Source: Squalus acanthias
Taxonomy: Eukaryota
NCBI GenBank assembly: GCA_030390025.1
Contig: JASTWF010000244.1
Coordinates: 496,001 to 560,000 of the forward strand
Length of the DNA: 64,000 nucleotides
Direction: 5' to 3'
Within the stretch, counting starts at the first letter, position 1; every line of letters starts with the position of its first letter. Positions 41,101-64,000 of the stretch are shown in pieces. A program made the position numbers and the translations under genes. The notes below the pieces were generated by a model. It was not told the DNA's origin. It searched no databases and worked only from the letters and a program-made list of their open reading frames with translations.

Positions 41101-44100
41101 GGACCCTCCCTCCCGTTAGATCTGGATCATGCTCTCCCGGACCCTCCCTCCCGTTGCACCCGGACATGTTCTCCCCAGCCCCTCCCATTAGACCTGGATC
41201 ATGTTCCCCCCGGCCCCTCCCGTTAGACCTGGATCATGTTCTCCCCGGCCCCTCCGTCCCGTAAGATGTGGATCATGTTCTCCCGGCCCCTCTCTCCCGT
41301 TAGACCTGGATCATGTTCCCCCCGGCCCCTCCCATTAGATCTGGATCATGTTCTTCCTGGCCCCTCCCTCCGGTTAGACCTGGATCATGTTCTCCCAGCC
41401 CCTCCCTCCCATTAGAACTGGATCATGTTATCCCCATCCTCTCCCTTCGGTTAGACCTGGATCATGTTCTCCCTGTCATCTACCTCCCGTTAGACCTGGA
41501 TCATGTTCTCCCCAGCCCCTCCCTCCTGTTAGATCTGGATCATGTTCTCCCCGGCCCCTCCCTCCCATTAGATCTGGATCATGTTCCCCCCGGCCCCTCC
41601 CTCCTGTGAGACCTGGATCATGTTCTTCCCGGCCCCTCCCTCCCGTTAGATCTGGATTATGTTCTCCCGACCTTTCCCTACCGTTAGACCTGGATCATGT
41701 TCTCCCCGGCTCCTCCCTCCCGTTACATCTGGATCATGTTTCCCCGGCCCCTCCCTCCCGTTAGATCTCGATCATGTTCTCCCGGCCTTTCCCTCCCGTA
41801 AGACCTGGATCATGTTCTTCCCGGCCCCTCCCTCCCGTTAGACCTGGATCATGTTCTCCCAGGCCTCTCCCTCCCGTTAGACCTGGATCATGTTCTCCCC
41901 GGCCCCTCCCTCCCATTAGACCTGGATCATGTTCTCCCGGCCCCTCCCTCCCATTAGAACTGGATCATGTTCTCCCGGACCCTCCCTCCCGTTACACCTG
42001 GATCATGTTATCCCCGGCCCCTCCCATTAGACCTGGATCATGTTCTCCCCGGCCCCTCCCTTTAGACCTGGATCATGGTCCCCCCGGCCCCTCCCGTTAG
42101 ATCTGGATCATGTTCTCCCTGGCCCCTCCCTCCTGTTAGATCTAGATCATGTTCCCCCCGGCCCCTCCCTCCTGTTAGATCTGGATCATGTTCTCCCCAT
42201 CCTCTCCCTTCGGTTAGACCTGGATCATGTTCTCCCCGGCCTCTACCTCCCGTTAGACCTGGATCATGTTCTCCCCGGCCCCTCCCTCCTGTTAGACCTG
42301 GATCATGTTCTCCCGGCACCTCCCTCCCGTTAGACCTGGATCATTTTCTCCCCGGCCCCTCCCTCCTGTTACACCTGAAAATTGTTCTCCCCGGCCCCTC
42401 CCTCCCGTTAGATCTGGATCATGTTCTCCCCGGCTCCTCCTTCCCATTAGATCTGGATCATGTTCTCCTGGCCCCTCCCTCCCGTTAGACCTGGAACTAG
42501 TTCTCCCGGGCCCCACCCTCCTGTTAGATCTGGATCATGTTCTCCCCGGCCCCTCCCTCCCATTAGACCTAGATCATGTTCTCAACGGCCCCTCCCTCCC
42601 GTTAGACCTGGATCATGTTATCCCCGGCCCCTCCCATTAGACCTGGATCATGTTCTCCCCGGCCCCTCCCGTTAGACCTGGATCATGTTGTCCCCGGCCC
42701 CTCCAGTTAGATCTGGATCATGTTCTCCCCGGCCCCTCCCTCCCGTTAGATCTGGATCATGTTCCCCCCGGCCCCTCCCTCCCGTTAGACCTGGATCATG
42801 TTCCCCCCGGCCCCTCCCTCCTGTTAGACCTGGATCATGTTCCCCCCGGACCCTTCCTCCCGTTAGACCTGGATCATGTTCTCCCCGGCCCCTTCCATCC
42901 AGTTAGACCTGGATCATGTTCTCCCCGGCCCCTACCTCCCATTAGATCTGGATCATGTTCTCCCCGGACCCTGCCTCCGGTTAGACCTGGATCATGTTCT
43001 CCCAGCCCCTCCCTCCCATTAGAACTGGATCATGTTATCCCCATCCTCTCCCTCCGGTTAGACCTGGATCATGTTCTCCCTGGCCCCTACCTCCCGTTAG
43101 ACATGGATCATGTTCTCCCCAGCCCCTCCCTCCTGTTAGACTGGATCATGTTCTCCCGACCTCTCCCTCCCGTTAGACCTGGATCATGTTCTCCCTGGCC
43201 CCTCCCTCCCATTAGATCTGGATCATGTTCTCCCCGGCCTCTCCCTCCCGTTAGACCTGCATCATGTTCTCCCCGGCCCCTCCCTCCCATTAGACCTGGA
43301 TCATGTTCTCCCCGGCCCCTCCCTCCCGTTAGACCTGGATCATGTTCTCCCGGACCCACCCTCCCGTTACACCTGGATCATGTTATCCCCGGCCCCTCCC
43401 ATTAGACCTGGATCATGTGCTCCCCGACCCCTCCCGTTAGACGTGGATGATGTTCCCCCCGGCCCCTCCCTTCCATTAGAACTGGATCATGTTCTCCCTG
43501 GCCCCTCGCTCCCGTTAGACCTGGATCTTGTTCTCCCCGGCTCCTCCTTCCCATTAGTTCTGGATCATGTTCTCCTGGCCCCTCCCTCCCGTTAGACCTG
43601 GATCATGTTCTACCAGACCCTCCCTCCCATTACACCCGGATCATGTACTCCCCGGCCCCTCCCATTAGACCTGGATCATGTTCTCCCCGGCCCCTCCCGT
43701 TAGACCTGGATCATGTTCCCCCCGGCCCCTCCCGTTAGACCTGGATCATGTTCTCCCCGGCCCCTCCCTCCCGTTAGACCTGGATCATGGTCTCCCGGCC
43801 CCACCCTTCCGTTAGACCTGGATCATGTTTCCCCCATCCCCTCCCATTAGATCTGGATCATGTTATCCCGACCTCTCCCTCCCGTTAGAACTGGATCATG
43901 TTCTCCCCGGCCCATCCGTCCCATTAGACCTGGATCATGTTCTCCCCGGCCCCTCCCTCCCGTTAGATCTGGATCATGTTCTCCCGGACCCTACCTCCTG
44001 TTAGACCTGGATCTTGTTCTACCGGCCCCTTCCGTTAGATCTGAATCATGTTCTCCCCGGCCCCTCCCATTAGACCTGGATCATGGTCTCCCCGGCCCCA

Positions 44101-47100
44101 TCCATCCCGTTAGACCTGGATCATGTTCTCCCCAGCCCCTCCCTCCCATTAGATCTGGATCATGTTCTCCCCGGCCCCTCCCTCCCATTAGATCTGGATC
44201 ATGTTCTCGCCGGCCCCTGCCTCCGGTTAGACCTGGATCATGTTCTCCCCGGCCTCTCCCTCCCGTTAGTCCTGGATAATATTCTCCCCGGCCTCTACCT
44301 CCCATGAGACCTGGATCATGTTCTTCCCGGCCCCTCCCTCCCGTTAGATCTGGATTATGTTCTCCCGACCTTTCCCTACCGTTAGACCTGGATCATGTTC
44401 TCCCCGGCTCCTCCCTCCCGTTAGATCTGGATCATGTTTCCCCGGCCCCTCCCTCCCGTTAGATCTCGATCATGTTCTCCCGGCCTTTCCCTCCCTTAAG
44501 ACCTGCATCATGTTCTCACCGGCCCTTCCCTCCCATTAGACCTGGATCATCTTCTTCCTGGCCCCTCCCTCCCGTTAGACCTGGATCATGTTCTCCCCGG
44601 CCTCTCCCTCCCGTTAGACCTGGATCATGTTCTCCCCGGCCCCTCCCTCCCATTAGACCTGGATCATGTTCTCCCGGCCCCTCCCTCCCATTAGACCTGG
44701 ATCATGTTCTCCCGGACCCTCCCTCCCGTTACACCTGGATCATGTTATCCCGGCCCCTCCCATTAGACCTGGATCATGTTCTCCCCGGCCCCTCCCGTTA
44801 GACCTGGATCATGTTCCCCCCGGCCCCTCCCGTTAGATCTGGATCATGTTCTCCCTGGCCCCTCCCTCCTGTTAGATCTAGATCATGTTCCCCCCGGCCC
44901 CTCCCTCCTGTTAGATCTGGATCATGTTCTCCCCATCCTCTCCCTTCGGTTAGACATGGATCATGTTCTCCCCGGCCTCTACCTCCCGTTAGACCTGGAT
45001 CATGTTCTCCCCGGCCCCTCCCTCCTGTTAGACCTGGATCATGTTCTCCCGGACCCTCCCTCCCGTTAGATCTGGATCATGCTCTCCCGGACCCTCCCTC
45101 CCGTTGCACCCGGACATGTTCTCCCCAGCCCCTCCCATTAGACCTGGATCATGTTCCCCCCGGCCCCTCCCGTTAGACCTGGATCATGTTCTCCCCGGCC
45201 CCTCCGTCCCGTAAGATGTGGATCATGTTCTCCCGGCCCCTCTCTCCCGTTAGACCTGGATCATGTTCCCCCCGGCCCCTCCCATTAGATCTGGATCATG
45301 TTCTTCCTGGCCCCTCCCTCCGGTTAGACCTGGATCATGTTCTCCCAGCCCCTCCCTCCCATTAGAACTGGATCATGTTATCCCCATCCTCTCCCTTCGG
45401 TTAGACCTGGATCATGTTCTCCCTGTCATCTACCTCCCGTTAGACCTGGATCATGTTCTCCCCAGCCCCTCCCTCCTGTTAGATCTGGATCATGTTCTCC
45501 CCGGCCCCTCCCTCCCATTAGATCTGGATCATGTTCCCCCCGGCCCCTCCCTCCCGTGAGACCTGGATCATGTTCTTCCCGGCCCCTCCCTCCCGTTAGA
45601 TCTGGATTATGTTCTCCCGACCTTTCCCTACCGTTAGACCTGGATCATGTTCTCCCCGGCTCCTCCCTCCCGTTACATCTGGATCATGTTTCCCCGGCCC
45701 CTCCCTCCCGTTAGATCTCGATCATGTTCTCCCGGCCTTTCCCTCCCGTAAGACCTGGATCATGTTCTTCCCGGCCCCTCCCTCCCGTTAGACCTGGATC
45801 ATGTTCTCCCAGGCCTCTCCCTCCCGTTAGACCTGGATCATGTTCTCCCCGGCCCCTCCCTCCCATTAGACCTGGATCATGTTCTCCCGGCCCCTCCCTC
45901 CCATTAGAACTGGATCATGTTCTCCCGGACCCTCCCTCCCGTTACACCTGGATCATGTTATCCCCGGCCCCTCCCATTAGACCTGGATCATGTTCTCCCC
46001 GGCCCCTCCCTTTAGACCTGGATCATGGTCCCCCCGGCCCCTCCCGTTAGATCTGGATCATGTTCTCCCTGGCCCCTCCCTCCTGTTAGATCTAGATCAT
46101 GTTCCCCCCGGCCCCTCGCTCCTGTTAGATCTGGATCATGTTCTCCCCATCCTCTCCCTTCGGTTAGACCTGGATCATGTTCTCCCCGGCCTCTACCTCC
46201 CGTTAGACCTGGATCATGTTCTCCCCGGCCCCTCCCTCCTGTTAGACCTGGATCATGTTCTCCCGGCACCTCCCTCCCGTTAGACCTGGATCATTTTCTC
46301 CCCGGCCCCTCCCTCCTGTTACACCTGAAAATTGTTCTCCCCGGCCCCTCCCTCCCGTTAGATCTGGATCATGTTCTCCCCGGCTCCTCCTTCCCATTAG
46401 ATCTGGATCATGTTCTCCTGGCCCCTCCCTCCCGTTAGACCTGGAACTAGTTCTCCCGGGCCCCACCCTCCTGTTAGATCTGGATCATGTTCTCCCCGGC
46501 CCCTCCCTCCCATTAGACCTAGATCATGTTCTCAACGGCCCCTCCCTCCCGTTAGACCTGGATCATGTTCTCCCCGGCCCCTCCCTCCCATTAGACCTAG
46601 ATCATGTTCTCAACGGCCCCTCCCTCCCGTTAGACCTGGATCATGTTATCCCCGGCCCCTCCCATTAGACCTGGATCATGTTCTCCCCGGCCCCTCCCGT
46701 TAGACCTGGATCATGTTGTCCCCGGCCCCTCCAGTTAGATCTGGATCATGTTCTCCCCGGCCCCTCCCTCCCGTTAGATCTGGATCATGTTCCCCCCGGC
46801 CCCTCCCTCCCGTTAGACCTGGATCATGTTCCCCCCGGCCCCTCCCTCCTGTTAGACCTGGATCATGTTCCCCCCGGACCCTTCCTCCCGTTAGACCTGG
46901 ATCATGTTCTCCCCGGCCCCTTCCATCCAGTTAGACCTGGATCATGTTCTCCCCGGCCCCTACCTCCCATTAGATCTGGATCATGTTCTCCCCGGACCCT
47001 GCCTCCGGTTAGACCTGGATCATGTTCTCCCAGCCCCTCCCTCCCATTAGAACTGGATCATGTTATCCCCATCCTCTCCCTCCGGTTAGACCTGGATCAT

Positions 47101-50100
47101 GTTCTCCCTGGCCTCTACCTCCCGTTAGACCTGGATCATGTTCTCCCCAGCCCCTCCCTCCTGTTAGATCTGGATCATGTTCTCCCGACCTCTCCCTCCC
47201 GTTAGACCTGGATCATGTTCTCCCTGGCCCCTCCCTCCCATTAGATCTGGATCATGTTCTCCCCGGCCTCTCCCTCCCGTTAGACCTGTATCATGTTCTC
47301 CCCGGCCCCTCCCTCCCATTAGACCTGGATCATGTTCTCCCCGGCCCCTCCCTCCCGTTAGACCTGGATCATGTTCTCCCGGACCCACCCTCCCGTTACA
47401 CCTGGATCATGTTATCCCCGGCCCCTCCCATTAGACCTGGATCATGTGCTCCCCGGCCCCTCCCGTTAGACGTGGATCATGTTCCCCCCGGCCCCTCCCT
47501 TCCATTAGAACTGGATCATGTTCTCCCTGGCCCCTCGCTCCCGTTAGACCTGGATCTTGTTCTCCCCGGCTCCTCCTTCCCATTAGTTCTGGATCATGTT
47601 CTCCTGGCCCCTCCCTCCCGTTAGACCTGGATCATGTTCTACCAGACCCTCCCTCCCATTACACCCGGATCATGTACTCCCCGGCCCCTCCCATTAGACC
47701 TGGATCATGTTCTCCCCGGCCCCTCCCGTTAGACCTGGATCATGTTCCCCCCGGCCCCTCCCGTTAGACCTGGATCATGTTCTCCCCGGCCCCTCCCTCC
47801 CGTTAGACCTGGATCATGGTCTCCCGGCCCCACCCTTCCGTTAGACCTGGATCATGTTTCCCCCAGCCCCTCCCATTAGATCTGGATCATGTTATCCCGA
47901 CCTCTCCCTCCCGTTAGAACTGGATCATGTTCTCCCCGGCCCATCCGTCCCATTAGACCTGGATCATGTTCTCCCCGGCCCCTCCCTCCCGTTAGATCTG
48001 GATCATGTTCTCCCGGACCCTCCCTCCTGTTAGACCTGGATCTTGTTCTACCGGCCCCTTCCGTTAGATCTGAATCATGTTCTCCCCGGCCCCTCCCATT
48101 AGACCTGGATCATGGTCTCCCCGGCCGCATCCATCCCGTTAGACCTGGATCATGTTCTCCCCAGCCCCTCCCTCCCATTAGATCTGGATCATGTTCTCCC
48201 CGGCCCCTCCCTCCCATTAGATCTGGATCATGTTCTCGCCGGCCCCTGCCTCCGGTTAGACCTGGATCATGTTCTCCCCGGCCTCTCCCTCCCGTTAGTC
48301 CTGGATAAAATTCTCCCCGGCCTCTACCTCCCATGAGACCTGGATCATGTTCTTCCCGGCCCCTCCCTCCCGTTAGATCTGGATTATGTTCTCCCGACCT
48401 TTCCCTACCGTTAGACCTGGATCATGTTCTCCCCGGCTCCTCCCTCCCGTTAGATCTGGATCATGTTTCCCCGGACCCTCCCTCCCGTTAGATCTCGATC
48501 ATGTTCTCCCGGCCTTTCCCTCCCGTAAGACCTGCATCATGTTCTCACCGGCCCTTCCCTCCCATTAGACCTGGATCATCTTCTTCCTGGCCCCTCCCTC
48601 CCGTTAGACCTGGATCATGTTCTCCCCGGCCTCTCCCTCCCGTTAGACCTGGATCATGTTCTCCCCGGCCCCTCCCTCCCATTAGACCTGGATCATGTTC
48701 TCCCGGCCCCTCCCTCCCATTAGACCTGGATCATGTTCTCCCGGACCCTCCCTCCCATTACACCTGGATCATGTTATCCCCGGCCCCTCCCATTAGACCT
48801 GGATCATGTTCTCCCCGGCCCCTCCCGTTAGACCTGGATCATGTTCCCCCCGGCCCCTCCCGTTAGATCTGGATCATGTTCTCCCTGGCCCCTCCTGTTA
48901 GATCTAGATCATGTTCCCCCCGGCCCCTCCCTCCTGTTAGATCTGGATCATGTTCTCCCCGGCCCCTCCCTCCCATTAGATCTGGATCATGTTATCCCCA
49001 TCCTCTCCCTTCGGTTAGACCTGGATCATGTTCTCCCTGTCATCTACCTCCCGTTAGACCTGGATCATGTTCTCCCCAGCCCCTCCCTCCTGTTAGATCT
49101 GGATCATGTTCTCCCCGGCCCCTCCCTCCCATTAGATCTGGATCATGTTCCCCCCGGCCCCTCCCTCCCGTTGGATCTGGATCATTTTCTCCCGGCCTCT
49201 CCCTTCCATTAGACCTGGATCATTTTCTCCCGGGCCCCTCCCTCCTGTTACACCTGGATCTTGTTCTCCCCGGCCCCTCCCTCCCGTTAGATCTGGATCA
49301 TGTTCTCCCAGCCCCTCCCTCCCATTAGAACTGGATCATGTTATCCCCATCCTCTCCCGCCGGTTAGACCTGAATCATGTTCTCCCTGGCCTCTACCTCC
49401 CGTTAGACCTGGATCATGTTCTCCCCAGCCCCTCCCTCCTGTTAGATCTGGATCATCTTCTCCCGACCTCTCCCTCCCGTTAGACCTGGATCATGTTCTC
49501 CCTGGCCCCTCCCTCCCATTAGATCTGGATCATGTTCTCCCCGGCCTCTCCCTCCCGTTAGACCTGGATCATGTTCTCCCCGGCCCCTCCCTCCCATTAG
49601 ACCTGGATCATGTTCTCCCCAGCCCCTCCCTCCCGTTAGACCTGGATCATGTTCTCCCGGACCCACCCTCCCGTTACACCTGGATCATGTTATCCCCGGC
49701 CCCTCCCATTAGACCTGGATCACGTTCTCCCCGGTCCCTCCCGTTAGACCTGGATCATGTTCCCCCCGGCCCCTCCCTTCCATTAGAACTGGTCATGTTC
49801 TCCCTGGCCCCTCGCTCCCGTTAGACCTGGATCTTGTTCTCCCCGGCTCCTCCTTCCCATTAGATCTGGATCATGTTCTCCTGGCCCCTCCCTCCCGTTA
49901 GACCTGGATCATGTTCTGCCGGCCCCTTCCTCCCGTTAGATCTGAATCATGTTCTCCCCGGCCCCTCCCATTAGACCTGGATCATGGTCTCCCCGGCCCC
50001 ATCCATCCCGTTAGACCTGGATCATGTTCTCCCCAGCCCCTCCCTCCCATTAGATCTGGATCATGTTCTCCCCGGCCCCTCCCTCCCATTAGATCTGGAT

Positions 50101-51023
50101 CATGTTCTCGCCGGCCCCTGCCTCCGGTTAGACCTGGATCATGTTCTCCCCGGCCTCTCCCTCCCGTTAGTCCTGGATAATATTCTCCCCGGCCTCTCCC
50201 TCCCGTGAGACCTGGATCATGTTCTCCCCGGCCCCTCCCTCCCGTTAGATCTGGATTATGTTCTCCCGACCTTTCCCTACCGTTAGACCTGGATCATGTT
50301 CTCCCCGGCTCCTCCCTCCCGTTAGATCTGGATCATGTTTCCCCGGCCCCTCCCTCCCGTTAGATCTCGATCATGTTCTCCCGGCCTTTCCCTCCCGTAA
50401 GACCTGCATCATGTTCTCCCCGGCCCCTCCCTCCCATTAGACCTGGATCATGTTCTCACCGGCCCTTCCCTCCCATTAGACCTGGATCATGTTCTTCCCG
50501 GCCCCTCCCTCCCGTTAGACCTGGATCATGTTCTCCCCGGCCTCTCCCTCCCGTTAGACCTGGATCATGTTCTCCCCTGCCCCTCCCTCCCATTAGACCT
50601 GGATCATGTTCTCCCGGCCCCTCCCTCCCATTAGATCTGGATCATGTTTCCCCCGGCCCCTCCCTCCCGTTAGATCTGGATCATTTTCTCCCGGCCTCTC
50701 CCTCCCGTTAGACCTGGATCATTTTCTCCCCGGCCCCTCCCTCCTGTTACACCTGGATCTTGTTCTCCCCGGCCCCTCCCTCCCGTTAGATCTGGATCAT
50801 GTTCTCCCCGGCTCCTCCTTCCCATTAGATCTGGATCATGTTCTCCTGGCCCCTCCCTCCTGTTAGATCTGGATCATGTTCTCCCCGGCCCCTCCCTCCC
50901 ATTAGACCTGGATCATGTTCTCCCCGGTCCCTCCCTCCCGTTAGACCTGGATCATGTTATCCCCGGCCCCTCCCATTAGACCTGGATCATGTTCTCCCCG
51001 GCCCCTCCCGTTAGACCTGGATC

Positions 51024-52192
51024 ATGTTGTCCCCGGCCCCTCCCGTTAGACCTGGATCATGTCCCCCCCCGGCCCCTCCAGTTAGATCTGGATCATGTTC
51101 CCCCCGGCCCCTCCCTTCCATTAGAACTGGATCATGTTCTCCCTGGCCCCTCGCTCCCGTTAGACCTGGATCTTGTTCTCCCCGGCTCCTCCTTCCCATT
51201 AGATCTGGATCAGGTTCTCCTGGCCCCTCCCTCCCGTTAGACCTGGATCATGATCTACCAGACCCTCCCTCCCATTACACCCGGATCATGTACTCCCCGG
51301 CCCCTCCCAGTAGACCTGGATCATGTTCTCCCAGGCCTCTCCCGTTAGACCTGGATCATGTTCTTCCCGGCCCCTCCCTCCCGTTAGACCTGGATCATGG
51401 TCTCCCGGCCCCACCCTTCCGTTAGACCTGGATCATGTTCTCCCCGGCCCCTCCCGTTAGACCTGGATCATGTTCCCCCCGGCCCCTCCCGTTAGACCTG
51501 GATCATGTTCTCCCTGGCCCCTCCCATTAGACCTGGATCAGATTCACCCCGGCCCCTCCCTCCCGTTAGACCTGGATCACGGTCTCCCGGCCCCTCCCTC
51601 CCGTTAGACCTGGATCACGGTCTCCCGGACCCTCCCTCCCGTTAGTCCTGGATCATGTCCTCCCGGCCCCTCCCTCCCGTTGGATCTGGATCATGTTCTC
51701 CCCATTCTCTCCCTCCGGTTAGACATGGATCATGTTCTCCCCGGCCCCTCCCTCCCATTAGACCTGGATCATGTTCTCCCGGACCCTCCCTCCCGTTACA
51801 CCTGGATCATGTTATCCCCGGCCCCTGCCATTAGACCTGGATCATGTTCTCCCTGGCCCCTCCTGTTGAACCTGGATCATGTTCCCCCCGGCCCCTCCCT
51901 TCCATTAGAACTGGATCATGTTCTCCCTGGCCCCTCGCTCCCGTTAGACCTGGATCTTGTTCTCCCCGGCTCCTCCTTCCCATTAGATCTGAATCATGTT
52001 CTCCTGGCCCCTCCCTCCCGTTAGACCTGGATCATGTTCTCCCAGACCCTCCCTCCCGTTACTCCCGGATCATGTACTCCCCGGTCCCTCCCATTAGACA
52101 TGGATCATGTTCTCCCCGGCCCCTCCCGTTAGACCTGGATCATGTTCCCCCCGGCCCCTGCCGTTAAACCTGGATCATGTTCTCCCCGGCCC
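51024..52192 (+). repeat. Left copy of the 1,169-bp direct duplication flanking the SINE
   Basis: Diagnostic variant monomers recur at a constant +1592 offset (ORFs 51024/52616 and 51844/53436). Confidence 0.9.
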
Positions 52193-52615
52193 GTGGCATA
52201 GTGGTTAGCACTGGTGCCTCACAGCGCCAGAGACCCGGGTTCGAATCTGACCTCGGGTGACTGTCTGTGTGGAGTTTGCACATTCTCCCCGTGTCTGCGT
52301 GGGTTTCCTCCGGGTGCTCCGGTTTCCTCCCACAGTCCAAAAATGTGTGGGTTAGGTTGATTTGGCTTTGATAAATTGACCCTTAGTGTTAGGGGGAATT
52401 AAATATGTGGGGTTATGGGGATAGGATGGGATATGTTAGGGGGAATTAAATACGTGGGGTTATGGGGGTAGGGTGGGATATGTGTACTGTGGGGATTAAA
52501 GCAGGGATAGGGTACTGGATTTGGATGATCAGCCATGATCGTATTGAATGGCGGAGCAGGCTCGACGGGCCGAATGGCCTACTCCTGCTCCTAGATTCTA
52601 TGTTTCTATGTTTCT
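52193..52615 (+). mobile_element. tRNA-derived V-domain SINE (HE1-like) with a CR1/HER1-derived 3' tail
   Basis: A box TGGCATAGTGG and B box GGTTCGAATC. V-domain CTGTGTGGAGTTTGCACATTCTCCCCGTGTCTGCGTGGGTTTCCTCCGGGTGCTCCGGTTTCCTCCCACAGTCCAAA. The 3' ~90 bp nearly match the CR1 tails at 1538-1620 and 14843-14938 and end in (TTCTATGT)3. Confidence 0.93.
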
Positions 52616-53784
52616 ATGTTGTCCCCGGCCCCTCCCGTTAGACCTGGATCATGTCCCCCCCCGGCCCCTCCAGTTAGATCTGGATCATGTTCCCCCCGGC
52701 CCCTCCCTTCCATTAGAACTGGATCATGTTCTCCCTGGCCCCTCGCTCCCGTTAGACCTGGATCTTGTTCTCCCCGGCTCCTCCTTCCCATTAGATCTGG
52801 ATCAGGTTCTCCTGGCCCCTCCCTCCCGTTAGACCTGGATCATGTTCTACCAGACCCTCCCTCCCATTACACCCGGATCATGTACTCCCCGGCCCCTCCC
52901 AGTAGACCTGGATCATGTTCTCCCAGGCCTCTCCCGTTAGACCTGGATCATGTTCTTCCCGGCCCCTCCCTCCCGTTAGACCTGGATCATGGTCTCCCGG
53001 CCCCACCCTTCCGTTAGACCTGGATCATGTTCTCCCCGGCCCCTCCCGTTAGACCTGGATCATGTTCCCCCCGGCCCCTCCCGTTAGACCTGGATCATGT
53101 TCTCCCTGGCCCCTCCCATTAGACCTGGATCAGATTCACCCCGGCCCCTCCCTCCCGTTAGACCTGGATCACGGTCTCCCGGCCCCTCCCTCCCGTTAGA
53201 CCTGGATCACGGTCTCCCGGACCCTCCCTCCCGTTAGTCCTGGATCATGTCCTCCCGGCCCCTCCCTCCCGTTAGATCTGGATCATGTTCTCCCCATTCT
53301 CTCCCTCCGGTTAGACATGGATCATGTTCTCCCCGGCCCCTCCCTCCCATTAGACCTGGATCATGTTCTCCCGGACCCTCCCTCCCGTTACACCTGGATC
53401 ATGTTATCCCCGGCCCCTGCCATTAGACCTGGATCATGTTCTCCCTGGCCCCTCCTGTTGAACCTGGATCATGTTCCCCCCGGCCCCTCCCTTCCATTAG
53501 AACTGGATCATGTTCTCCCTGGCCCCTCGCTCCCGTTAGACCTGGATCTTGTTCTCCCCGGCTCCTCCTTCCCATTAGATCTGAATCATGTTCTCCTGGC
53601 CCCTCCCTCCCGTTAGACCTGGATCATGTTCTCCCAGACCCTCCCTCCCGTTACTCCCGGATCATGTACTCCCCGGTCCCTCCCATTAGACATGGATCAT
53701 GTTCTCCCCGGCCCCTCCCGTTAGACCTGGATCATGTTCCCCCCGGCCCCTGCCGTTAAACCTGGATCATGTTCTCCCCGGCCC
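52616..53784 (+). repeat. Right copy of the 1,169-bp direct duplication flanking the SINE
   Basis: Starts ATGTTGTCCCCGG exactly as at 51024 and ends ...TGCCGTTAAACCTGGATCATGTTCTCCCCGGCCC exactly as at 52192. Confidence 0.9.
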
Positions 53785-56700
53785 CTCCCTCCCGTAAGAT
53801 CTGGATCATGTTCTCCCGGCCCCTCCCTTCCGTTAGACCTGGATCATGTTCCCCCCGGCCCCTCCCATTAGATCTGGATCATGTTCTTCCCGGCCCCTCC
53901 CTCCGGTTAGACCTGGATCATGTTCTCCCAGCCCCTCCCTCCCATTAGAACTGGATCATGTTATCCCCATCCTCTCCCTCCGGTTAGACCTGGATCATGT
54001 TCTCCCTTGCCTCTACCTCCCGTTAGACCTGGATCATGTTCTCCCCAGCCCCTCCCTCCTGTTAGATCTGGATCATGTTCTCCCGACCTCTCCCTCCCGT
54101 TAGACCTGGATCATGTTCTCCCCGGCCCCTCCCTCCCATTAGATCTGGATCATGTTCCCCCCGGCCCCTCCCTCCCGTTAGATCTGGATCATGTTCTCCC
54201 GGCACCTCCCTCCCGTTAGACCTGGATCATTTTCTCCCCGGCCCCTCCCTCCTGTTACACCTGGATATTGTGCTCCCCGGCCCCTCCCTCCCGTTAAATC
54301 TGGATCATGTTCTCCCCGGCTCCTCCTTCCCATTAGATCTGGATCATGTTCTCCTGGCCCCTCCCTCCCGTTAGACCTGTAACATGTTCTCCCGGGCCCC
54401 TCCCTCCTGTTAGATCTGGATCATGTTCTCCCCGGCCCCTCCCTCCCATTAGACCTAGATCATGTTCTCCCCGGCCCCTCCCTCCCGTTAGACCTGGATA
54501 ATGTTATCCCCGGCCCCTCCCATTAGACCTGGATCATGTTCTCCCCGGCCCCTCCCGTCAGACCTGGATCTTGTTGTCCCCGGCCCCTCCCGTTAGACCT
54601 GGATCTTGTCCCCCCTGGCCCCTCCAGTTAGATCTGGATCATGTTCTCTCCGGCCCCTCCCTCCCGTTAGATCTGGATCATGTTCCCCGCGGCCCCTCCC
54701 TCCCGTTAGACCTGGATCATGTTCCCCCCGGCCCCTCCCTCCTGTTAGACCTGGATCATGTTCCCCCTGGCCCCTCCCTCCTGTTAGACCTGGATCATGT
54801 TCCCCCGACCCCTCCCATTAGACCTGGATCATGTTCTTCCCGGCCCCTCCCTCCCGTTAGATCTGGATCATGTTCTCGCCGGCCCCTCCCTCCCGTTATA
54901 CCTGGATCATGTTCTCCCCGGCCCCTTCCTCCCGTTAGATCTGGATCATGTTCTCCCCATCCTCTCCCTCCGGTTAGACATGGATCATGTTCTCCCCGGC
55001 CACTCCCTCCCATTAGACCTGGATCATGTTCTCCCCGGCCCCTTCCATCCCGTTAGACCTGGATCATGTTCTCCCCGGCCCCTACCTCCCATTAGATCTG
55101 GATCATGTTCTCCCCGGCCCCTGCCTCCGGTTAGACCTGGATCATGTTCTCCCTGGCCTCTCCCTCCCGTTAGACCTGGATAATGTTCTCCCCGGCCTCC
55201 ACCTCCCGTTAGACCTGGATCATGTTCTCCCCGGCCCCTCCCTCCCGTTAGACCTGGATCATGTTCTCCCCGGCCCCTCCCTCCCGTTAGACCTGGATCA
55301 TGTTCTCCCCGGCCCCTCCCTCCCATTAGACCTGGATCATGTTCTCCCCGGCCCCTACCTCCCGTTAGACCTGGATCATGTTCTCCCGGACCCTCCCTCC
55401 CGTTACACCTGGATCATGTTATCCCCGGCCCCTCCCATTAGACCTGGATCATGTTCTCCCCGGCCCCTCCCGTTAGACCTGGATCATGTTCCCCCCGGCC
55501 CCGCCCTTCCATTAGAACCGGATCATGTTCTCCCTGGCCCCTCGCTCCCGTTAGACCTGGATCATGTTCTACCAGACCCTCCCTCCCGTTACACCCAGAA
55601 CATGTACTCCCCGGCCCCTCCCATTAGACCTGGATCATGTTCTCCCCGGCCCCTCCCGTTAGACCTGGATCAAGTTCCCTCCGGCCCCTCCCGTTAGACC
55701 TGGATCATGTTCTCCCCGGCCCCTCCCTCCCGTTAGACCTGGATCATGGTCTCCCGGCCCCACCCTTCCGTTAGACCTGGATCATGTTTCCCCCAGCCCC
55801 TCCCATTAGATCTGGATCATGTTCTCCTGGCCCCTCCCTCCCGTTAGATCTGGATCATGTTCTCCCCATCCTCTCCCTCCGGTTAGACATGGATCATGTT
55901 CTCCCCGGCCCCTCCCTCCCGTTAGATCTGGATCATGTTATCCCGACCTCTCCCTCCCGTTAGATCTGGATCATGTTCTCCCCGGCCCATCCGTCCCATT
56001 TGACCTGGATCATGTTCTCTCCGGCCCCTCCCTCCCGTTAGATCTGGATCATGTTCTCCCGGACCCTCCCTCCTGTTAGACCTGGATCTTGTTCTACCGG
56101 CCCCTTCCTCCCGTTAGATCTGAATCATGTTCTCCCCGGCCCCTCCCATTAGACCTGGATCATGGTCTCCCCGGCCGCATCCATCCCGTTAGACCTGGAT
56201 CATGTTCTCCCCGGCCCCTCCCTCCCATTAGATCTGGATCATGTTCTCCCCGGCCCCTCCCTCCCATTAGATCTGGATCATGTTCTCGCCGGCCCCTGCC
56301 TCCGGTTAGACCTGGATCATGTTCTCCCCGGCCTCTCCCTCCCGTTAGTCCTGGATAATATTCTCCCCGGCCTCTGCCTCCTGTGAGACCTGGATCTTGT
56401 TCTCCCCGGATCCTCCTTCCCATTAGATCTGGATCATGTCCTCCCTGGCCCCTCCCGTTAAACCTGGAGCATCTTCTCCCTGGCCCCTGCCGTTAGACCT
56501 GGATCATGTTCTCCCTGGCCCCTCCCTCCTGTTAGACCTGGATCATGTTCTCCCTGGCCCTTCCCGTTAGACCTGGATCATGTTCTCCCTGCCCCCTCCC
56601 TCCCGTTAGACCTGGATCATGTTCTCCCTGGCCCCTCCCGTTAGACCTGGATCATGTCCTCCCTGGCCCCTCCCTCCCGTTAGACCTGGATCATGTTCTC

Positions 56701-59700
56701 CCCGGCCCCTCCCTCCCGTTAGACCTGGATCATGTCCTCCCTGGCCCCTCCCTCCCGTTAGACCTGGATCATGTTCTCACCGGCCCTACCCTCCCGTTAG
56801 ACCTGGATCATGTTCTTCCCGGCCCCTCCCTCCCGTTAGACCTGGATCTTGTTCTCCCCGGCCCCTCCCTTCCGTTAGACCTGGATCTTGTTCTCCCTGG
56901 ATCCTCCTTCCCATTAGACCTGGATCATGTTCTCCCCGGCCCCTCCCTTTCATTAGACCTGGATCATGTCCTCCCTGGCCCCTCCCTCCCGTTAGACCTG
57001 GATCATGTCCTCCCTGGCCCCTCCCGTTAGACCTGGATCATCTTCTCCCTGGCCCCTCCCGTTAGACCTGGATCATGTTCTCCCTGGCCCCTCCCTCCCG
57101 TTAGAACTGGATCATGTTCTCCCCGGCTCCTCCCTCCCGTTAGACCTGGATCATGTTCTCCCTAGCCCCTCCCTCCTGTCAGACCTGCATCATGTTCTCC
57201 CCGGCCCCTCCCTCCCGTTAGATCTGGATCATGTTCTCCCGGCCTCTCCCTCCCATTAAACCTGCATCATGTTCTCACCGGCCCTTCCCTCCCATTAGAC
57301 CTGGATCATGTTCTTCCCGGCCCCTCCCTCCCGTTAGACCTGGATCTTGTTCTCTCCGGCCCCTCCCTCCCGTTAGTCCTGGATCTTGTTCTCCCCGGCT
57401 CCTCCTTCCCATTATATCTGGATCATGTTCTCCTGGCCCCTCCCTCCCATTAGATTTGGATCATGTTCTCCCCGGCCCCTCCCTCCCATTAGATCTGGAT
57501 CCTGTTCTCCCTGGCCCCTCCCGTTAGACCTGGATCATGTTCTCCCTGGCCCCTCCCTCCCGTTAGACCTGGATCATGTTCTCCCCTGCCCCTCCCTCCC
57601 ATTAGATGGATCTTCTTCTCCCCGGCCCCTCCCATTAGACCTGCATCATGTTCTCCCCGGCCCCTCCCGTTAGACCTGCATCATGTTCCCCCCGGCCCCT
57701 CCCGTTAGATCTGGATCATGTTCTCCCTGGCCCCTCCCATTAGACCTGGATCATGTTCTCCCCCGCCACTCCCATTAGACCTGCATCATGTTCCCCCCGG
57801 CCCCTCCCGTTAGACCTGCATCATGTTCCCCCCGGCCCCTCCCGTTAGATCTGGATCATGTTCCCCCCGGCCCCTCCCGTTAGTTCTGGATCATGTTCTC
57901 CCCCGCCACTCCCATTAGACCTGGATCATGGTCGCCCGGCCCCTCCCTTCCGTTAGACCAGGATCATGTTTCCCCCGGCCCCTCCCACTAGATCTGGATC
58001 ATGTTCTTCCCGGCCCCTCCCTCCGGTTAGACCTGGATCATGTTCTCCCGGCCCCTCCCTCCCGTTAGATCTGGATCATGTTCTCCACATCCTCTCCCTC
58101 CGGTTAGACATGGATCTTGTTTTCCCCGGCCCCTCCCTCCCATGAGACCTGGATCATGTTCTCCCCGGCCCCTCCCTCCCTTTAGAACTGGATCATGTTC
58201 TCCCCGGCCCCTCCCTCCCATTAGACCTGGATAATGTTCTCCCCGGCCTCTACCTCCCGTCAGACCTGGATCATGTTCTCCCCGGCCCCTCCCTCCCGTT
58301 AGACCTGGATCATGTTCTCCCCGGCCCCTCCCTCCCGTTAGATCTGAATCATGTTCTCCCTGGCCCCTCCCTCCCGGTAGACCTGGATCATGTTCTCCCG
58401 GACCCTCCCTCCTGTTACACCTGGATAATGTTATCCCCGGCCTCTCCCATTAGATCTCGATCATGTTCTCCCCGGCCCCTCCCTCCCATTAGATCTGGAT
58501 CATGTTCTCACCGGCCCCTGCCTCCGGTTAGACCTGGATCATGCTCTCCTGGCCTTTCCCTCCCGTTACACCCGGATCATGTTATCCCCGGCCCCTCCAT
58601 TAGACCTGGATCATGTTCTCCCCGGCCCCTCCCATTAGACCTGGATCATGTTCTCCCCGGCCCCTCCCGTTAGACCTGGATCACGTTCTCCCTGGACCCT
58701 CCCTCCCGTTAGACCTGGATCATGTTCTCCCTGGCCCCTCCCTCCTGTTAGACCTGGATCATGTTCTCCCCAGCCCCTCCCTTCCATTAGACCTGGATCA
58801 TGTTCTCCCCGGCCCCTCCAGTTAGACCTGGATCATGTTCCCCCCGGCCCCTCCCGTTAAACCTGGAGCATCTTCTCCCTGGCCCCTGCCGTTAGACCTG
58901 GATCATGTTCTCCCTGGCCCCTCCCTCCTGTTAGACCTGGATCATGTTCTCCCTGGCCCTTCCCGTTAGACCTGGATCATGTTCTCCCTGCCCCCTCCCT
59001 CCCGTTAGACCTGGATCATGTTCTCCCTGGCCCCTCCCGTTAAACCTGGATCATGTCCTCCCTGGCCCCTCCCATTAGACCTGGATCATGTTCTCCCTGG
59101 CCCCTCCCTCCCGTTAGACCTGGATCTTGTTCTCCCCGGCCCCTCCCTCCCGTTAGACCTGGATCATGTTCTCACCGGCCCTTCCCTCCCGTTAGACCTG
59201 GATCATGTTCTTCCCGGCCCCTCCCTCCCGTTAGACCTGGATCTTGTTCTCCCCGGCCCCGCCCTCCAGTTAGACCTGGATTTTGTTCTCCCCGGATCCT
59301 CCTTCCCATTAGATCTGGATCATGTTCTCCAGGCCCCTCCCTCCCGTTAGACCTGGATCATGTCCTCCCTGGCCCTATCGTTAGACCTGGATCATGTTCT
59401 CCTGGCCCCTCCCTCCCGGTAGCCCTGGATCATGTTCTCCCAAGGCCCCTCCCTCCCGTTAGACCTGGATCATGTTCTCCCTGGCCCCTCCCTCCCGTTA
59501 GACCTGGATCATGTTCTCCCCGGCCCCTCCCTCCCGTTAGACCTGGATCATGTCCTCCCTGGCCCCTCCCTCCCGTTAGACCTGGATCATGTTCTCACCG
59601 GCCCTTCCCTCCCGTTAGACCTGGATCATGTTCTTCCCGGCCCCTCCCTCCCGTTAGACCTGGATCTTGTTCTCCCCGGCCCCTCCCTTCCGTTAGACCT

Positions 59701-62700
59701 GGATCTTGTTCTCCCTGGATCCTCCTTCCCATTAGACCTGGATCATGTTCTCCCCGGCCCCTCCCTTTCATTAGACCTGGATCATGTCCTCCCTGGCCCC
59801 TCCCTCCCGTTAGACCTGGATCATGTCCTCCCTGGCCCCTCCCGTTAGACCTGGATCATCTTCTCCCTGGCCCCTCCCGTTAGACCTGGATCATGTTCTC
59901 CCTGGCCCCTCCCTCCCGTTAGAACTGGATCATGTTCTCCCCGGCTCCTCCCTCCCGTTAGACCTGGATCATGTTCTCCCTAGCCCCTCCCTCCTGTCAG
60001 ACCTGCATCATGTTCTCCCCGGATCCTCCCTCCCGTTAGATCTGGATCATGTTCTCCCGGCCTCTCCCTCCCATTAAACCTGCATCATGTTCTCACCGGC
60101 CCTTCCCTCCCATTAGACCTGGATCATGTTCTTCCCGGCCCCTCCCTCCCGTTAGACCTGGATCTTGTTCTCTCCGGCCCCTCCCTCCCGTTAGACCTGG
60201 ATCTTGTTCTCCCCGGCTCCTCCTTCCCATTATATCTGGATCATGTTCTCCTGGCCCCTCCCTCCCATTAGATTTGGATCATGTTCTCCCCGGCCCCTCC
60301 CTCCCATTAGATCTGGATCCTGTTCTCCCTGGCCCCTCCCGTTAGACCTGGATCATGTTCTCCCTGGCCCCTCCCTCCCGTTAGACCTGGATCATGTTCT
60401 CCCCTGCCCCTCCCTCCCATTAGATGGATCTTCTTCTCCCCGGCCCCTCCCATTAGACCTGCATCATGTTCTCCCCGGCCCCTCCCGTTAGACCTGCATC
60501 ATGTTCCCCCCGGCCCCTCCCGTTAGATCTGGATCATGTTCTCCCTGGCCCCTCCCATTAGACCTGGATCATGTTCTCCCCCGCCACTCCCATTAGACCT
60601 GGATCATGGTCGCCCAGCCCCTCCCTTCCGTTAGACCAGGATCATGTTCTCCCGGCCCCTCCCTCCCGTTAGATCTGGATCATGTTCTCCACATCCTCTC
60701 CCTCCGGTTAGACATGGATCATGTTCTCCCCCGCCCCTCCCTCCCATGAGACCTGGATCATGTTCTCCCTGGCCCCTCCCTCCCTTTAGAACTGGATCAT
60801 GTTCTCCCCGGCCCCTCCCTCCCATTAGACCTGGATAATGTTCTCCCCGGCCTCTACCTCCCGTCAGACCTGGATCATGTTCTCCCCGGCCCCTCCCTCC
60901 CGTTAGACCTGGATCATGTTCTCCCCGGCCCCTCCCTCCCGTTAGATCTGAATCATGTTCTCCCTGGCCCCTCCCTCCCGTTAGACCTGGATCATGTTCT
61001 CCCGGACCCTCCCTCCTGTTACACCTGGATAATGTTATCCCCGGCCTCTCCCATTAGATCTGGATCATGTTCTCCCCGGCCCCTCCCTCCCATTAGATCT
61101 GGATCATGTTCTCACCGGCCCCTGCCTCCGGTTAGACCTGGATCATGCTCTCCCGGCCTTTCCCTCCCGTTACACCCGGATCATGTTATCCCCGGCCCCT
61201 CCATTAGACCTGGATCATGTTCTCCCCGGCCCCTCCCATTAGACATGGATCATGTTCTCCCCGGCCCCTCCCGTTAGACCTGGATCACGTTCTCCCTGGA
61301 CCCTCCCTCCCGTTAGACCTGGATCATGTTCTCCCTGGCCCCTCCATCCTGTTAGACCTGGATCATGTTCTCCCCAGCCCCTCCCTTCCATTAGACCTGG
61401 ATCATGTTCTCCCCGGCCCCTCCAGTTAGACCTGGATCATGTTCCCCCCGGCCCCTCCCGTTAGACCTGGATCATATTCTCCCTGGCCCCTCCCATTAGA
61501 CCTGGATCAGATTCACCCCAGCCCCTCCCTCCCGTTAGACCTGGATCACGGTCTCCCGGCCCCTCCCTCCCGTTTGACCTGGATCACGGTCTCCCGGACC
61601 CTCCCTCCCGTTAGTCCTGGATCATGTCCTCCCGGCCCCTCCCTCCCGTTAGATCTGGATCATGTTCTCCCCATTCTCTCCCTCCGGTTAGACATGGATC
61701 ATGTTCTCCCCGGTCCCTTCCATCCCGTTAGATCTGGATCATGTTCTCCCCGGCCCCTCCGTCCCATTAGACCTGGATCTTGTTCTCTCGGCCCCTCCCT
61801 CCCGTTAGACCTGGATCATGTTCTCACCGGCCCTTCCCTCCCGTTAGACCTGGATCATGTTCTTCCCGGCCCCTCCCTCCCGTTAGACCTGGATCTTGTT
61901 CTCCCCGGCCCCGCCCTCCAGTTAGACCTGGATTTTGTTCTCCCCGGATCCTCCTTCCCATTAGATCTGGATCATGTTCTCCAGGCCCCTCCCTCCCGTT
62001 AGACCTGGATCATGTCCTCCCTGGCCCTATCGTTAGACCTGGATCATGTTCTCCTGGCCCCTCCCTCCCGGTAGCCCTGGATCATGTTCTCCCAAGGCCC
62101 CTCCCTCCCGTTAGACCTGGATCATGTTCTCCCTGGCCCCTCCCTCCCGTTAGACCTGGATCATGTTCTCCCCGGCCCCTCCCTCCCGTTAGACCTGGAT
62201 CATGTCCTCCCTGGCCCCTCCCTCCCGTTAGACCTGGATCATGTTCTCACCGGCCCTTCCCTCCCGTTAGACCTGGATCATGTTCTTCCCGGCCCCTCCC
62301 TCCCGTTAGACCTGGATCTTGTTCTCCCCGGCCCCTCCCTTCCGTTAGACCTGGATCTTGTTCTCCCTGGATCCTCCTTCCCATTAGACCTGGATCATGT
62401 TCTCCCCGGCCCCTCCCTTTCATTAGACCTGGATCATGTCCTCCCTGGCCCCTCCCTCCCGTTAGACCTGGATCATGTCCTCCCTGGCCCCTCCCGTTAG
62501 ACCTGGATCATCTTCTCCCTGGCCCCTCCCGTTAGACCTGGATCATGTTCTCCCTGGCCCCTCCCTCCCGTTAGAACTGGATCATGTTCTCCCCGGCTCC
62601 TCCCTCCCGTTAGACCTGGATCATGTTCTCCCTAGCCCCTCCCTCCTGTCAGACCTGCATCATGTTCTCCCCGGCCCCTCCCTCCCGTTAGATCTGGATC

Positions 62701-64000
62701 ATGTTCTCCCGGCCTCTCCCTCCCATTAAACCTGCATCATGTTCTCACCGGCCCTTCCCTCCCATTAGACCTGGATCATGTTCTTCCCGGCCCCTCCCTC
62801 CCGTTAGACCTGGATCTTGTTCTCTCCGGCCCCTCCCTCCCGTTAGACCTGGATCTTGTTCTCCCCGGCTCCTCCTTCCCATTATATCTGGATCATGTTC
62901 TCCTGGCCCCTCCCTCCCATTAGATTTGGATCATGTTCTCCCCGGCCCCTCCCTCCCATTAGATCTGGATCCTGTTCTCCCTGGCCCCTCCCGTTAGACC
63001 TGGATCATGTTCTCCCTGGCCCCTCCCTCCCGTTAGACCTGGATCATGTTCTCCCCTGCCCCTCCCTCCCATTAGATGGATCTTCTTCTCCCCGGCCCCT
63101 CCCATTAGACCTGCATCATGTTCTCCCCGGCCCCTCCCGTTAGACCTGCATCATGTTCCCCCCGGCCCCTCCCGTTAGATCTGGATCATGTTCTCCCTGG
63201 CCCCTCCCATTAGACCTGGATCATGTTCTCCCCCGCCACTCCCATTAGACCTGGATCATGGTCGCCCGGCCCCTCCCTTCCGTTAGACCAGGATCATGTT
63301 TCCCCCGGCCCCTCCCACTAGATCTGGATCATGTTCTTCCCGGCCCCTCCCTCCGGTTAGACCTGGATCATGTTCTCCCGGCCCCTCCCTCCCGTTAGAT
63401 CTGGATCATGTTCTCCACATCCTCTCCCTCCGGTTAGACATGGATCATGTTCTCCCGGCCCCTCCCTCCCGTTAGTTCTGGATCATGTTCTCCACATCCT
63501 CTCCCTCCGGTTAGACATGGATCTTGTTTTCCCCGGCCCCTCCCTCCCATGAGACCTGGATCATGTTCTCCCCGGCCCCTCCCTCCCTTTAGAACTGGAT
63601 CATGTTCTCCCCGGCCCCTCCCTCCCATTAGACCTGGATAATGTTCTCCCCGGCCTCTACCTCCCGTCAGACCTGGATCATGTTCTCCCCGGCCCCTCCC
63701 TCCCGTTAGACCTGGATCATGTTCTCCCCGGCCCCTCCCTCCCGTTAGATCTGAATCATGTTCTCCCTGGCCCCTCCCTCCCGTTAGACCTGGATCATGT
63801 TCTCCCGGACCCTCCCTCCTGTTACACCTGGATAATGTTATCCCCGGCCTCTCCCATTAGATCTGGATCATGTTCTCCCCGGCCCCTCCCTCCCATTAGA
63901 TCTGGATCATGTTCTCACTGGCCCCTGCCTCCGGTTAGACCTGGATCATGCTCTCCCGGCCTTTCCCTCCCGTTACACCCGGATCATGTTATCCCCGGCC

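What the first reader, a model, noticed from the sequence alone, without database searches (positions are those of the whole stretch)
51024..53784. SINE inside the satellite is bracketed by a ~1.17-kb 'giant target-site duplication'
Seen: 51024-52192 is repeated at 52616-53784 (offset 1592 = 1169 + 423-bp SINE). I could spot only two substitutions by eye (~51253 and ~51682). The duplication starts exactly at the SINE 3' tail and ends exactly at its 5' junction, which is TSD geometry. Both junctions show microhomology: the tail ...CTATGTT overlaps satellite CATGTT, and satellite CGGCCC replaces the SINE's missing first bases. Locally it mimics a 16-bp TSD (ATGTTCTCCCCGGCCC / ATGTTGTCCCCGGCCC), but the two halves belong to monomers ~30 units apart. 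Known: CR1-mobilised inserts usually have very short or no TSDs. Inference: target-primed reverse transcription was resolved out of register in the tandem array, so one retroposition event itself expanded the satellite by ~30 monomers. That would be a retrotransposition-driven route to higher-order repeats.
Basis: partly seen in the sequence, partly recalled or inferred. Interest (0 to 1): 0.85.

Follow-up and report, generated by a model that had tools for sequence, protein, structure and literature searches.

The report
SINE insertion with kilobase target duplication
A short retroposon sitting in a long shark-type satellite array is flanked on both sides by the same 1.17-kb piece of satellite, most likely because its insertion copied that piece, an outcome already known from human LINE-1 experiments.

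Summary
51024-52192 and 52616-53784 are 1169-bp direct repeats with 2 mismatches and no indels. Every other paralog in the 40-kb, 39-bp-unit satellite is at most 88.4% identical. The repeats abut a 423-bp SINE-like insert, which is the only interruption among about 1058 monomers.

Older paralogs show that both outer junctions (X|left copy, right copy|Y) are ancestral contiguities. The ancestor was therefore X-B-Y with one block. The first and last 16-mers of the block differ by one base, and both copies carry the same difference. This argues against a 16-bp TSD in a pre-existing tandem repeat. I read it as one retroposition-coupled duplication, a "large TSD" (confidence 0.78).

This is a known kind of event. 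Kb-scale TSDs and L1-bridged tandem duplications are published for human L1. At least six other kb-scale duplications at 99% or more in this array have no SINE.

Assembly error and the empty allele remain untested. The scan's first-stage readers noted three similar kb-scale flanking repeats around CR1/Tx1 elements elsewhere in this genome, all unchecked.

The parts
23320..64000 (.). Satellite array with a 39-bp unit (35/38/39-bp variants), about 1071 copies. It runs off the window end.
   Evidence: TRF. Anchor segmentation gives 1058 anchors and one non-satellite interruption.
50924..51049 (+). Ancestral contiguity across X|B. The rare ATGTTG monomer sits with its usual upstream context (about 100 bp).
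   Evidence: the ATGTTG variant occurs in 9 of 798 GATCATGTTN monomers, and the other 8 share the same upstream context; paralogs at offsets -15609 and -18802 have no mismatch from 50929 to 51049.
51024..52192 (+). Left copy of the duplicated block B (30 monomers + 16 bp). It abuts the SINE 5' end.
52193..52615 (+). SINE-like retroposon, 423 bp (428 bp if the 5 shared bases are counted). It has a tRNA-like A-box-like string at 52194-52204 and a B-box-like string near 52238-52248, read by eye.
   Evidence: Sequence. ARAGORN and Rfam gave no hit. The 3' 110 bp match other elements in the window at 87-90%.
52387..52483 (+). 47-bp tandem duplication inside the SINE (2.1 copies, 94% matches).
   Evidence: TRF.
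52553..52591 (+). 3' hairpin (8-bp outer stem GGAGCAGG/CCTGCTCC plus a 5-bp inner stem) just upstream of the tail.
   Evidence: strand folding, (z = -2.61). The same hairpin lies at 14868-14908 next to a similar tail.
52596..52620 (+). 8-nt microsatellite tail (TTCTATGT)x3.1, 100% matches. Its last 5 bases (52616-52620, ATGTT) are shared with the satellite.
   Evidence: TRF. Junction strings.
52616..53784 (+). Right copy of block B. It abuts the SINE 3' tail.
53760..53828 (+). Ancestral contiguity across B|Y.
   Evidence: four paralogs (offsets -22349, -24174, -19157, -24976) have no mismatch over these 69 bp. Collinear identity of about 96-98% extends to both sides.

Best explanation
A CR1-type, tRNA-headed SINE retroposed into the satellite, and the same event duplicated 1169 bp (30 monomers + 16 bp) of target DNA. 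This is a kilobase-scale target-site duplication.

Shown:
- The pre-insertion sequence was X-B-Y with one block.
- The two copies touch the SINE's 5' end and 3' tail.
- The 3' junction has a 5-nt overlap (ATGTT) between the (TTCTATGT)n tail and the satellite.

Inferred:
- The bottom strand was nicked at GATC|ATGTT, and the RNA tail annealed to that end and primed reverse transcription.
- Second-strand synthesis was primed not 3-5 nt away, as is usual for this clade, but by a top-strand 3' end ...CGGCCC lying 1169 nt downstream.
- My preferred route to that end (about half of the weight within this explanation) is that the reciprocal (left) end was first extended by copying the sister chromatid in register, in a break-induced or synthesis-dependent manner. 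It then captured the cDNA end by short homology, as proposed for 1-10-kb L1-associated tandem duplications.
- The alternatives are a distant second nick, or a pre-existing break on the sister chromatid. They give the same product and cannot be told apart from the sequence.
For: - The repeats are 1169 bp with 2 mismatches and end exactly at the insert. All other paralogs are at most 88.4% identical.
- X|B is ancestral. The ATGTTG variant is rare (9 of 798 monomers), and in all 8 other places it follows the same roughly 100-bp context as at 51024. In the right copy that context is replaced by the SINE tail (mismatch-free span 50929-51049).
- B|Y is ancestral. Four paralogs span 53760-53828 without a mismatch.
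- The terminal 16-mers read G...C | SINE | G...C, which needs no mutation under a 1169-bp duplication.
- The insert carries the hallmarks of a CR1-mobilised retroposon at its 3' end: a hairpin plus a perfect 8-nt microsatellite (compare passages of PMC5729268).
- The SINE is the only interruption of the array.
- Precedent exists. L1 TSDs above 100 bp and above 1 kb are reported (PMC5223499 passages). So are 1-10-kb tandem duplications 'regarded as large TSDs' (bioRxiv 10.1101/2024.12.14.628481 passages) and an L1-bridged tandem duplication with a sister-chromatid model (PMC7058536 passages).
- Three unchecked scan notes describe kb-scale direct repeats around CR1/Tx1 elsewhere in this genome.
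Against:
- The age of the SINE relative to the duplication could not be measured. There is no second full copy in the window, and CpG observed/expected of about 0.5 in the SINE parts against 0.31 in nearby unique DNA is only a weak hint of youth.
- The array duplicates kb-scale segments readily without any SINE, so a later duplication process was certainly available.
- The family's usual TSD is short (3-5 bp for L2/CR1 clades), which makes this an exceptional outcome.
- ARAGORN and Rfam do not recognise the head.
- The 5' microhomology is untested.
Confidence: 0.78

Rival explanations
1. An ordinary short-TSD SINE insertion came first. A separate repair event followed later (microhomology-mediated break-induced replication, or flank-to-flank conversion) and copied the block from one flank to the other, with both breakpoints at the SINE ends.
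For: The array makes kb-scale duplications of 99% identity or more without SINEs. For any register shift, the homology window between left and right flank is bounded by the SINE on both sides (geometric argument, inference).
Against: A replacing conversion would leave one outer junction non-ancestral, yet both are ancestral. That leaves only an insertional duplication with both ends within a few bases of the SINE ends, which are free DNA ends only during insertion itself. The C-variant 16-mer at the 5' junction and the G-variant at the 3' junction are not a matching short TSD.
Confidence: 0.08
2. Assembly artefact: the block-SINE-block arrangement does not exist in the animal. Examples would be a haplotype mix-up or a mis-join in a satellite.
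For: Satellite arrays are hard to assemble. The 0.17% difference between the copies is in the range of allelic differences (inference). No read evidence was obtained.
Against: There are no N runs in the window. A mis-join would need reads containing 'block end-SINE head' and 'SINE tail-block start', and neither exists in any simple single-block allele. The two copies differ at 2 sites, so this is not a plain copy-paste.
Confidence: 0.06
3. A circular DNA made of block + SINE integrated by homologous recombination into a single-block allele (Campbell-type integration), giving block-SINE-block.
For: The product geometry would be identical (inference). Tandem repeats are known sources of extrachromosomal circles (recalled, not checked here).
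Against: It needs a prior allele with the SINE at the block end, and a circle junction exactly at the SINE tail. That is two extra steps with no trace. The intact tail and the 5-nt tail/target overlap are what target-primed reverse transcription gives directly.
Confidence: 0.03
4. The SINE landed by chance at the junction of a pre-existing two-copy tandem duplication.
For: In the inferred empty array, 116 of 39089 positions have abutting ungapped direct repeats of 99% identity or more and 200-6000 bp. This is a lower bound, since gapped duplications are missed. Such sites therefore exist.
Against: Taking the SINE out leaves a junction 16 bp out of monomer register. A seamless 1153-bp repeat plus a 16-bp TSD would require the two 16-mers next to the SINE to be identical. 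They differ, and each matches the distal copy instead. The right copy lacks the upstream context that accompanies the ATGTTG monomer in the other 8 of 8 places. No third partial copy exists.
Confidence: 0.01

Closest known systems
Large (over 100 bp to over 1 kb) target-site duplications of human LINE-1 insertions in cultured cells (Gilbert 2002/2005 and Symer 2002 as cited in, and new data of, PMC5223499)
   Same: A non-LTR retroelement insert is flanked directly by long direct repeats of target DNA. The size is in the same range, since TSDs above 1 kb are reported. The explanation is a second-strand priming end far from the first nick (passages).
   Different: Here the insert is a non-autonomous SINE with a CR1-type hairpin and 8-nt microsatellite tail, not a poly(A) L1. 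It lies in an assembled animal genome (soma or germ line, and fixed or polymorphic, not tested here), not in a cell-culture clone, and the target is a satellite. Tables S1/S2 of that paper, which list TSD sizes, were not visible to me.
L1-associated small (1-10 kb) tandem duplications in cancers and experimental clones, 'regarded as large TSDs' (bioRxiv 10.1101/2024.12.14.628481), and the L1-bridged tandem duplication of PCAWG (PMC7058536)
   Same: The architecture is a tandem duplication with the retroelement at the junction. [quoted passage not shown]
   Different: Those events are somatic, involve L1, and range up to 22.6 Mb. No satellite context or SINE is mentioned in the passages I saw.
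CR1-mobilised tRNA-derived SINEs (e.g. TguSINE1/PittSINE of birds; shark and coelacanth SINE families listed in PMC3747384)
   Same: A tRNA-like head with A- and B-box-like strings, a 3' hairpin and an 8-nt microsatellite tail. TTTCTATG here matches 7 of 8 bases of the amniote ATTCTRTG quoted in PMC5729268.
   Different: The family was not identified. The head is not recognised by ARAGORN or Rfam, and no partner LINE was tied to it. The usual TSD of this clade is 3-5 bp, against 1169 bp here.
Satellite higher-order repeat formation by unequal exchange
   Same: It adds tens of monomers at once. The same array shows several such kb-scale duplications at 99% identity or more.
   Different: Those copies are head-to-tail and in register with nothing between them. 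Here the copies are separated by exactly one retroposon, and the bare junction would be 16 bp out of register.

Membership tests
Retroposition with a large target-site duplication | Direct repeats abut both ends of the insert with no spacer | tested here: met
   identity stops at 52192/52193 and starts at 52616. There are 5 ambiguous bases at the 3' junction.
Retroposition with a large target-site duplication | The pre-integration site held the duplicated segment once | tested here: met
   Met by internal paralog evidence only. Both outer junctions are ancestral contiguities, and there is no third copy. An actual empty allele was not seen, because no reads were laid.
Retroposition with a large target-site duplication | The insert is a retroelement joined through its 3' tail, as in target-primed reverse transcription | tested here: met
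   A perfect (TTCTATGT)x3 tail directly at the junction, a hairpin upstream, and a 5-nt tail/target overlap.
Retroposition with a large target-site duplication | The insert and the duplication are of the same age | not testable with these tools
The blocks differ by 2 of 1169 bases.
CR1-mobilised tRNA-derived SINE | tRNA-derived head with Pol III A and B boxes | tested here: inconclusive
   A-box-like TGGCATAGTGG and B-box-like GGTTCGAATC were read by eye (the box consensus is recalled). ARAGORN found 0 genes and Rfam 0 matches.
CR1-mobilised tRNA-derived SINE | 3' hairpin plus 8-nt microsatellite shared with a CR1-clade LINE | tested here: met
   The hairpin and tail are present. The same hairpin and a similar tail lie at 14826-14939. 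The partner LINE itself was not identified.
CR1-mobilised tRNA-derived SINE | Many dispersed copies in the genome | not tested
   Only the 64-kb window was available. Only the 3' part matches elsewhere in it.
Satellite higher-order repeat by unequal crossing-over | Seamless, in-register head-to-tail copies | tested here: not met
   The copies are separated by the SINE. The block is 30 monomers + 16 bp, so a direct junction would be out of register.

The most novel reading that the evidence does not exclude
Kilobase-scale target duplications are a recurrent, heritable outcome of CR1- and Tx1-type retroposition in this cartilaginous-fish genome. Four first-reader notes among 612 windows point this way, this one included. 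If true, non-LTR elements here routinely duplicate exons, genes and satellite segments. In satellites they would also plant composite 'retroposon + monomers' units that unequal exchange could later amplify into higher-order repeats.
Probability: 0.25. Interest if true: 0.6.

Novelty: new member of a known kind. Interest (0 to 1): 0.4.

Why it matters
The sequence alone gives a clean natural example of a retroposition event that duplicated more than 1 kb of its target. The example holds only if the assembly is right. Such events have mostly been seen for human L1 in cell culture and tumours. Here it involves a CR1-type SINE, a clade whose usual TSD is 3-5 bp. Because the target is a satellite with monomer variants, both breakpoints and the ancestral state can be read to within a few bases. 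The case also shows that one insertion can lengthen a satellite by 30 monomers. Its wider weight depends on whether the three other unchecked kb-scale cases noted in this genome hold up. A single case is a curiosity rather than a new mechanism.

Tried and rejected
- Pre-existing tandem duplication hit by chance: rejected on register, on the G/C pattern of the 16-mers and on the missing upstream context.
- Replacing gene conversion between the flanks: rejected because both outer junctions are ancestral.
- Unequal sister-chromatid exchange after insertion: rejected on logic. It yields either two SINEs or none, and only one SINE is present.
- A 16-bp TSD as the true TSD: rejected. The two 16-mers differ, each equals its distal twin, and 16 bp is not the clade's usual stagger.
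- Dating the SINE against other copies: no full copy lies in the window. CpG observed/expected was uninformative.
- tRNA or RNA-family identification of the head: no hits.
- Literature: the searches showed me no paper on a kb-scale TSD of a CR1-type SINE or inside a satellite. For most hits I saw only the listing, and supplements are closed, so this is not proof of absence.
- Both differing sites are derived in the left copy. With n = 2 this does not discriminate between the mechanisms.
Full report
What is there. The window holds unique DNA up to about 23.3 kb. After that a single satellite runs off the end: 23320-64000, 39-bp unit, about 1071 copies, 84% matches (TRF). It is strongly C-rich on the + strand (GC skew about -0.42). 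Anchor segmentation finds 1058 monomer anchors, mostly 35, 38 or 39 bp apart. It finds exactly one non-satellite interruption, at 52193-52615. This insert starts GTGGCATAGTGGTTAGCAC, with an A-box-like string and a B-box-like GGTTCGAATC about 40 bp on. The box consensus is recalled. ARAGORN and Rfam do not call the head. The insert contains a 47-bp internal tandem duplication. It ends in a hairpin at 52553-52591 (z = -2.61), followed by a perfect (TTCTATGT)x3 microsatellite. A hairpin plus an 8-nt microsatellite is the 3' signature of CR1-mobilised SINEs in the passages I read of PMC5729268. An element end at 14826-14939 carries the same hairpin and a similar tail. I therefore accept 'CR1-type SINE' as a working label, but the family was not identified.

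Check of the observation. 51024-52192 and 52616-53784 are 1169 bases each, with 2 mismatches (51253, 51682) and no indel. At the same offset the flanks do not match. The block's other paralogs in the array reach at most 88.4%. The left copy ends at the first base of the insert. The right copy starts within the last 5 bases of the tail, where ATGTT is shared.

Is it just the satellite's own turnover? This was the main worry. The array is full of recent kb-scale duplications without any SINE:
- 30454-33743 / 33648-36936 (3291 bp, 99.6%)
- 40807-44865 / 44757-48895 (two HSPs, 99.3-99.6%)
- 59075-60663 / 61728-63316 (99.3%)
- 29504-30750 / 31329-32575 (99.3%)
- 56633-57790 / 59451-60608 / 62103-63260 (99.5-99.7%)
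- 39884-40845 / 46615-47576 (99.3%)

I therefore tested the rivals on the sequence itself.

(a) Pre-existing tandem repeat hit by the SINE. In the inferred empty array, only 116 of 39089 positions have abutting ungapped repeats of 99% identity or more. This is a lower bound, because duplications with indels are missed. More tellingly, the block is 30 monomers + 16 bp, so the bare junction would be out of register. A seamless 1153-bp repeat plus a 16-bp TSD predicts identical 16-mers on the two sides of the SINE. Instead the 16-mers read G-variant (block start) ... C-variant (block end) | SINE | G-variant ... C-variant. This costs no mutation under a 1169-bp duplication. It costs a specific back-matching substitution under the rival.

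(b) Replacing conversion between the flanks. The ATGTTG monomer variant is rare (9 of 798 GATCATGTTN monomers). In all 8 other places it is preceded by the same roughly 100-bp context that precedes it at 51024. In the right copy that context is replaced by the SINE tail. Paralogs at offsets -15609 and -18802 match 50929-51049 without a mismatch. At the other end, four paralogs match 53760-53828 without a mismatch. Collinear similarity of 96-98% extends to both sides. Both outer junctions are thus ancestral. The ancestor was X-B-Y with one block, and nothing was overwritten.

(c) Unequal exchange after insertion gives two SINEs or none, and only one is present.

What remains besides a coupled event is a later insertional duplication whose two breakpoints both fall within a few bases of the SINE ends, a circle integration, or an assembly error. 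Each needs extra coincidences or is untested.

Mechanism. What is shown is TSD geometry, an intact tail at the junction, and a 5-nt tail/target overlap. The rest is inferred:
- A bottom-strand nick at GATC|ATGTT.
- Annealing of the RNA tail, followed by reverse transcription.
- Second-strand priming from a top-strand end ...CGGCCC 1169 nt downstream.

By tRNA numbering (established knowledge), the A box starts at position 8, and only one base of the insert precedes it. About 6 head bases are therefore either missing or coincide with the satellite's CGGCCC. This could not be tested without a consensus.

Three published routes lead to such a distant end:
- A distant second nick (PMC5223499, Discussion passages).
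- A cDNA joining a break on the sister chromatid downstream of the integration site (PMC7058536, Fig. 7 legend passage).

I prefer the third, because the clade's own second cut is close (3-5 bp, PMC4245944 passages) and its 5' joining is by annealing (same paper). The sequence cannot decide between the three. Both differing sites carry the rarer, probably derived state in the left copy, but two sites prove nothing. The only register feature is that the capture point lies in the same monomer phase 30 units on, which short-homology capture would explain.

Comparison with what is known.
- L1 TSDs above 100 bp occur in up to 10% of HeLa events. In NER-deficient cells, 18 TSDs (38% of those over 100 bp) exceeded 1 kb (PMC5223499 passages; its Tables S1/S2 were not visible to me).
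- 1-10-kb L1-junction tandem duplications are called large TSDs.
- HeLa L1 events with 'extremely long TSDs' are mentioned in PMC2912911 (passage), and 'many L-TSDs' in PMC4245944.

The kind of event is therefore known. What is new here is the element type, the host lineage and the satellite target. In five searches I saw no paper on a kb-scale TSD for a CR1-type SINE or inside a satellite. Most hits were seen as listings only.

Earlier notes of this scan, all unchecked, list three more kb-scale direct repeats around non-LTR elements in this genome: CR1 with about 2.2 kb, CR1 with about 3 kb, and Tx1 with 871 bp. I could not read those loci. They make a general, non-satellite mechanism more likely, and they are the reason for the novel reading.

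Limits.
- There is no read evidence.
- No other individual or species was examined.
- No SINE consensus was available.
- The age of the blocks (2 of 1169 = 0.17%) is the lowest divergence among the large duplications measured ungapped: 7 of 1829, 4 of 1158, 6 of 1158, 9 of 1247 and 7 of 962. Gene conversion could blur this.

Verdict. The coupling of insertion and duplication is well supported by internal evidence (0.78). The out-of-register mechanism and the 'route to higher-order repeats' are not shown. The event is a new member of a known kind, of moderate interest.

Noticed in passing
window 28700-48900 and 56600-64000: The satellite holds at least six kb-scale duplications at 99% identity or more without any insert. 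Examples are 30454-33743/33648-36936, 40807-44865/44757-48895 and 59075-60663/61728-63316. This points to fast turnover in 1.8-4-kb steps.
   Followed up: partly
window 27502, 30397, 32222, 35415, 38304, 39982, 42685, 46713, 51024: A rare ATGTTG monomer variant recurs nine times, always in the same roughly 160-bp context and spaced 1.7-4.3 kb apart. It marks an older, irregular higher-order periodicity. None occurs after 51024 except the duplicated one at 52616.
   Followed up: partly
window 52387-52483: A 47-bp tandem duplication (2.1 copies, 94% matches) lies inside the SINE. Whether it is a feature of the family or specific to this copy is unknown.
   Followed up: no
window 14826-14939: The 3' end of a retroelement carries the same hairpin as the SINE (87% over 110 bp) and a (TCTATGTA)x3.4 tail. 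It may be the partner CR1-type LINE family or another SINE. Weaker matches lie at 1536-1616, 6367-6428 (minus strand) and 21360-21414.
   Followed up: no
window 51253 and 51682: At both sites where the copies differ, the left copy carries the state that is rarer in the array (1 against 6, and 3 against 96 occurrences of the 11-mers). Both changes probably arose in the copy attached to the SINE 5' end.
   Followed up: partly
window 27604-27643, 56390-63000 (about ten places): Monomers with an extra anchor-like match give 16+23-bp anchor spacings and recur mainly in the last 8 kb of the array. This is a local monomer subtype.
   Followed up: no
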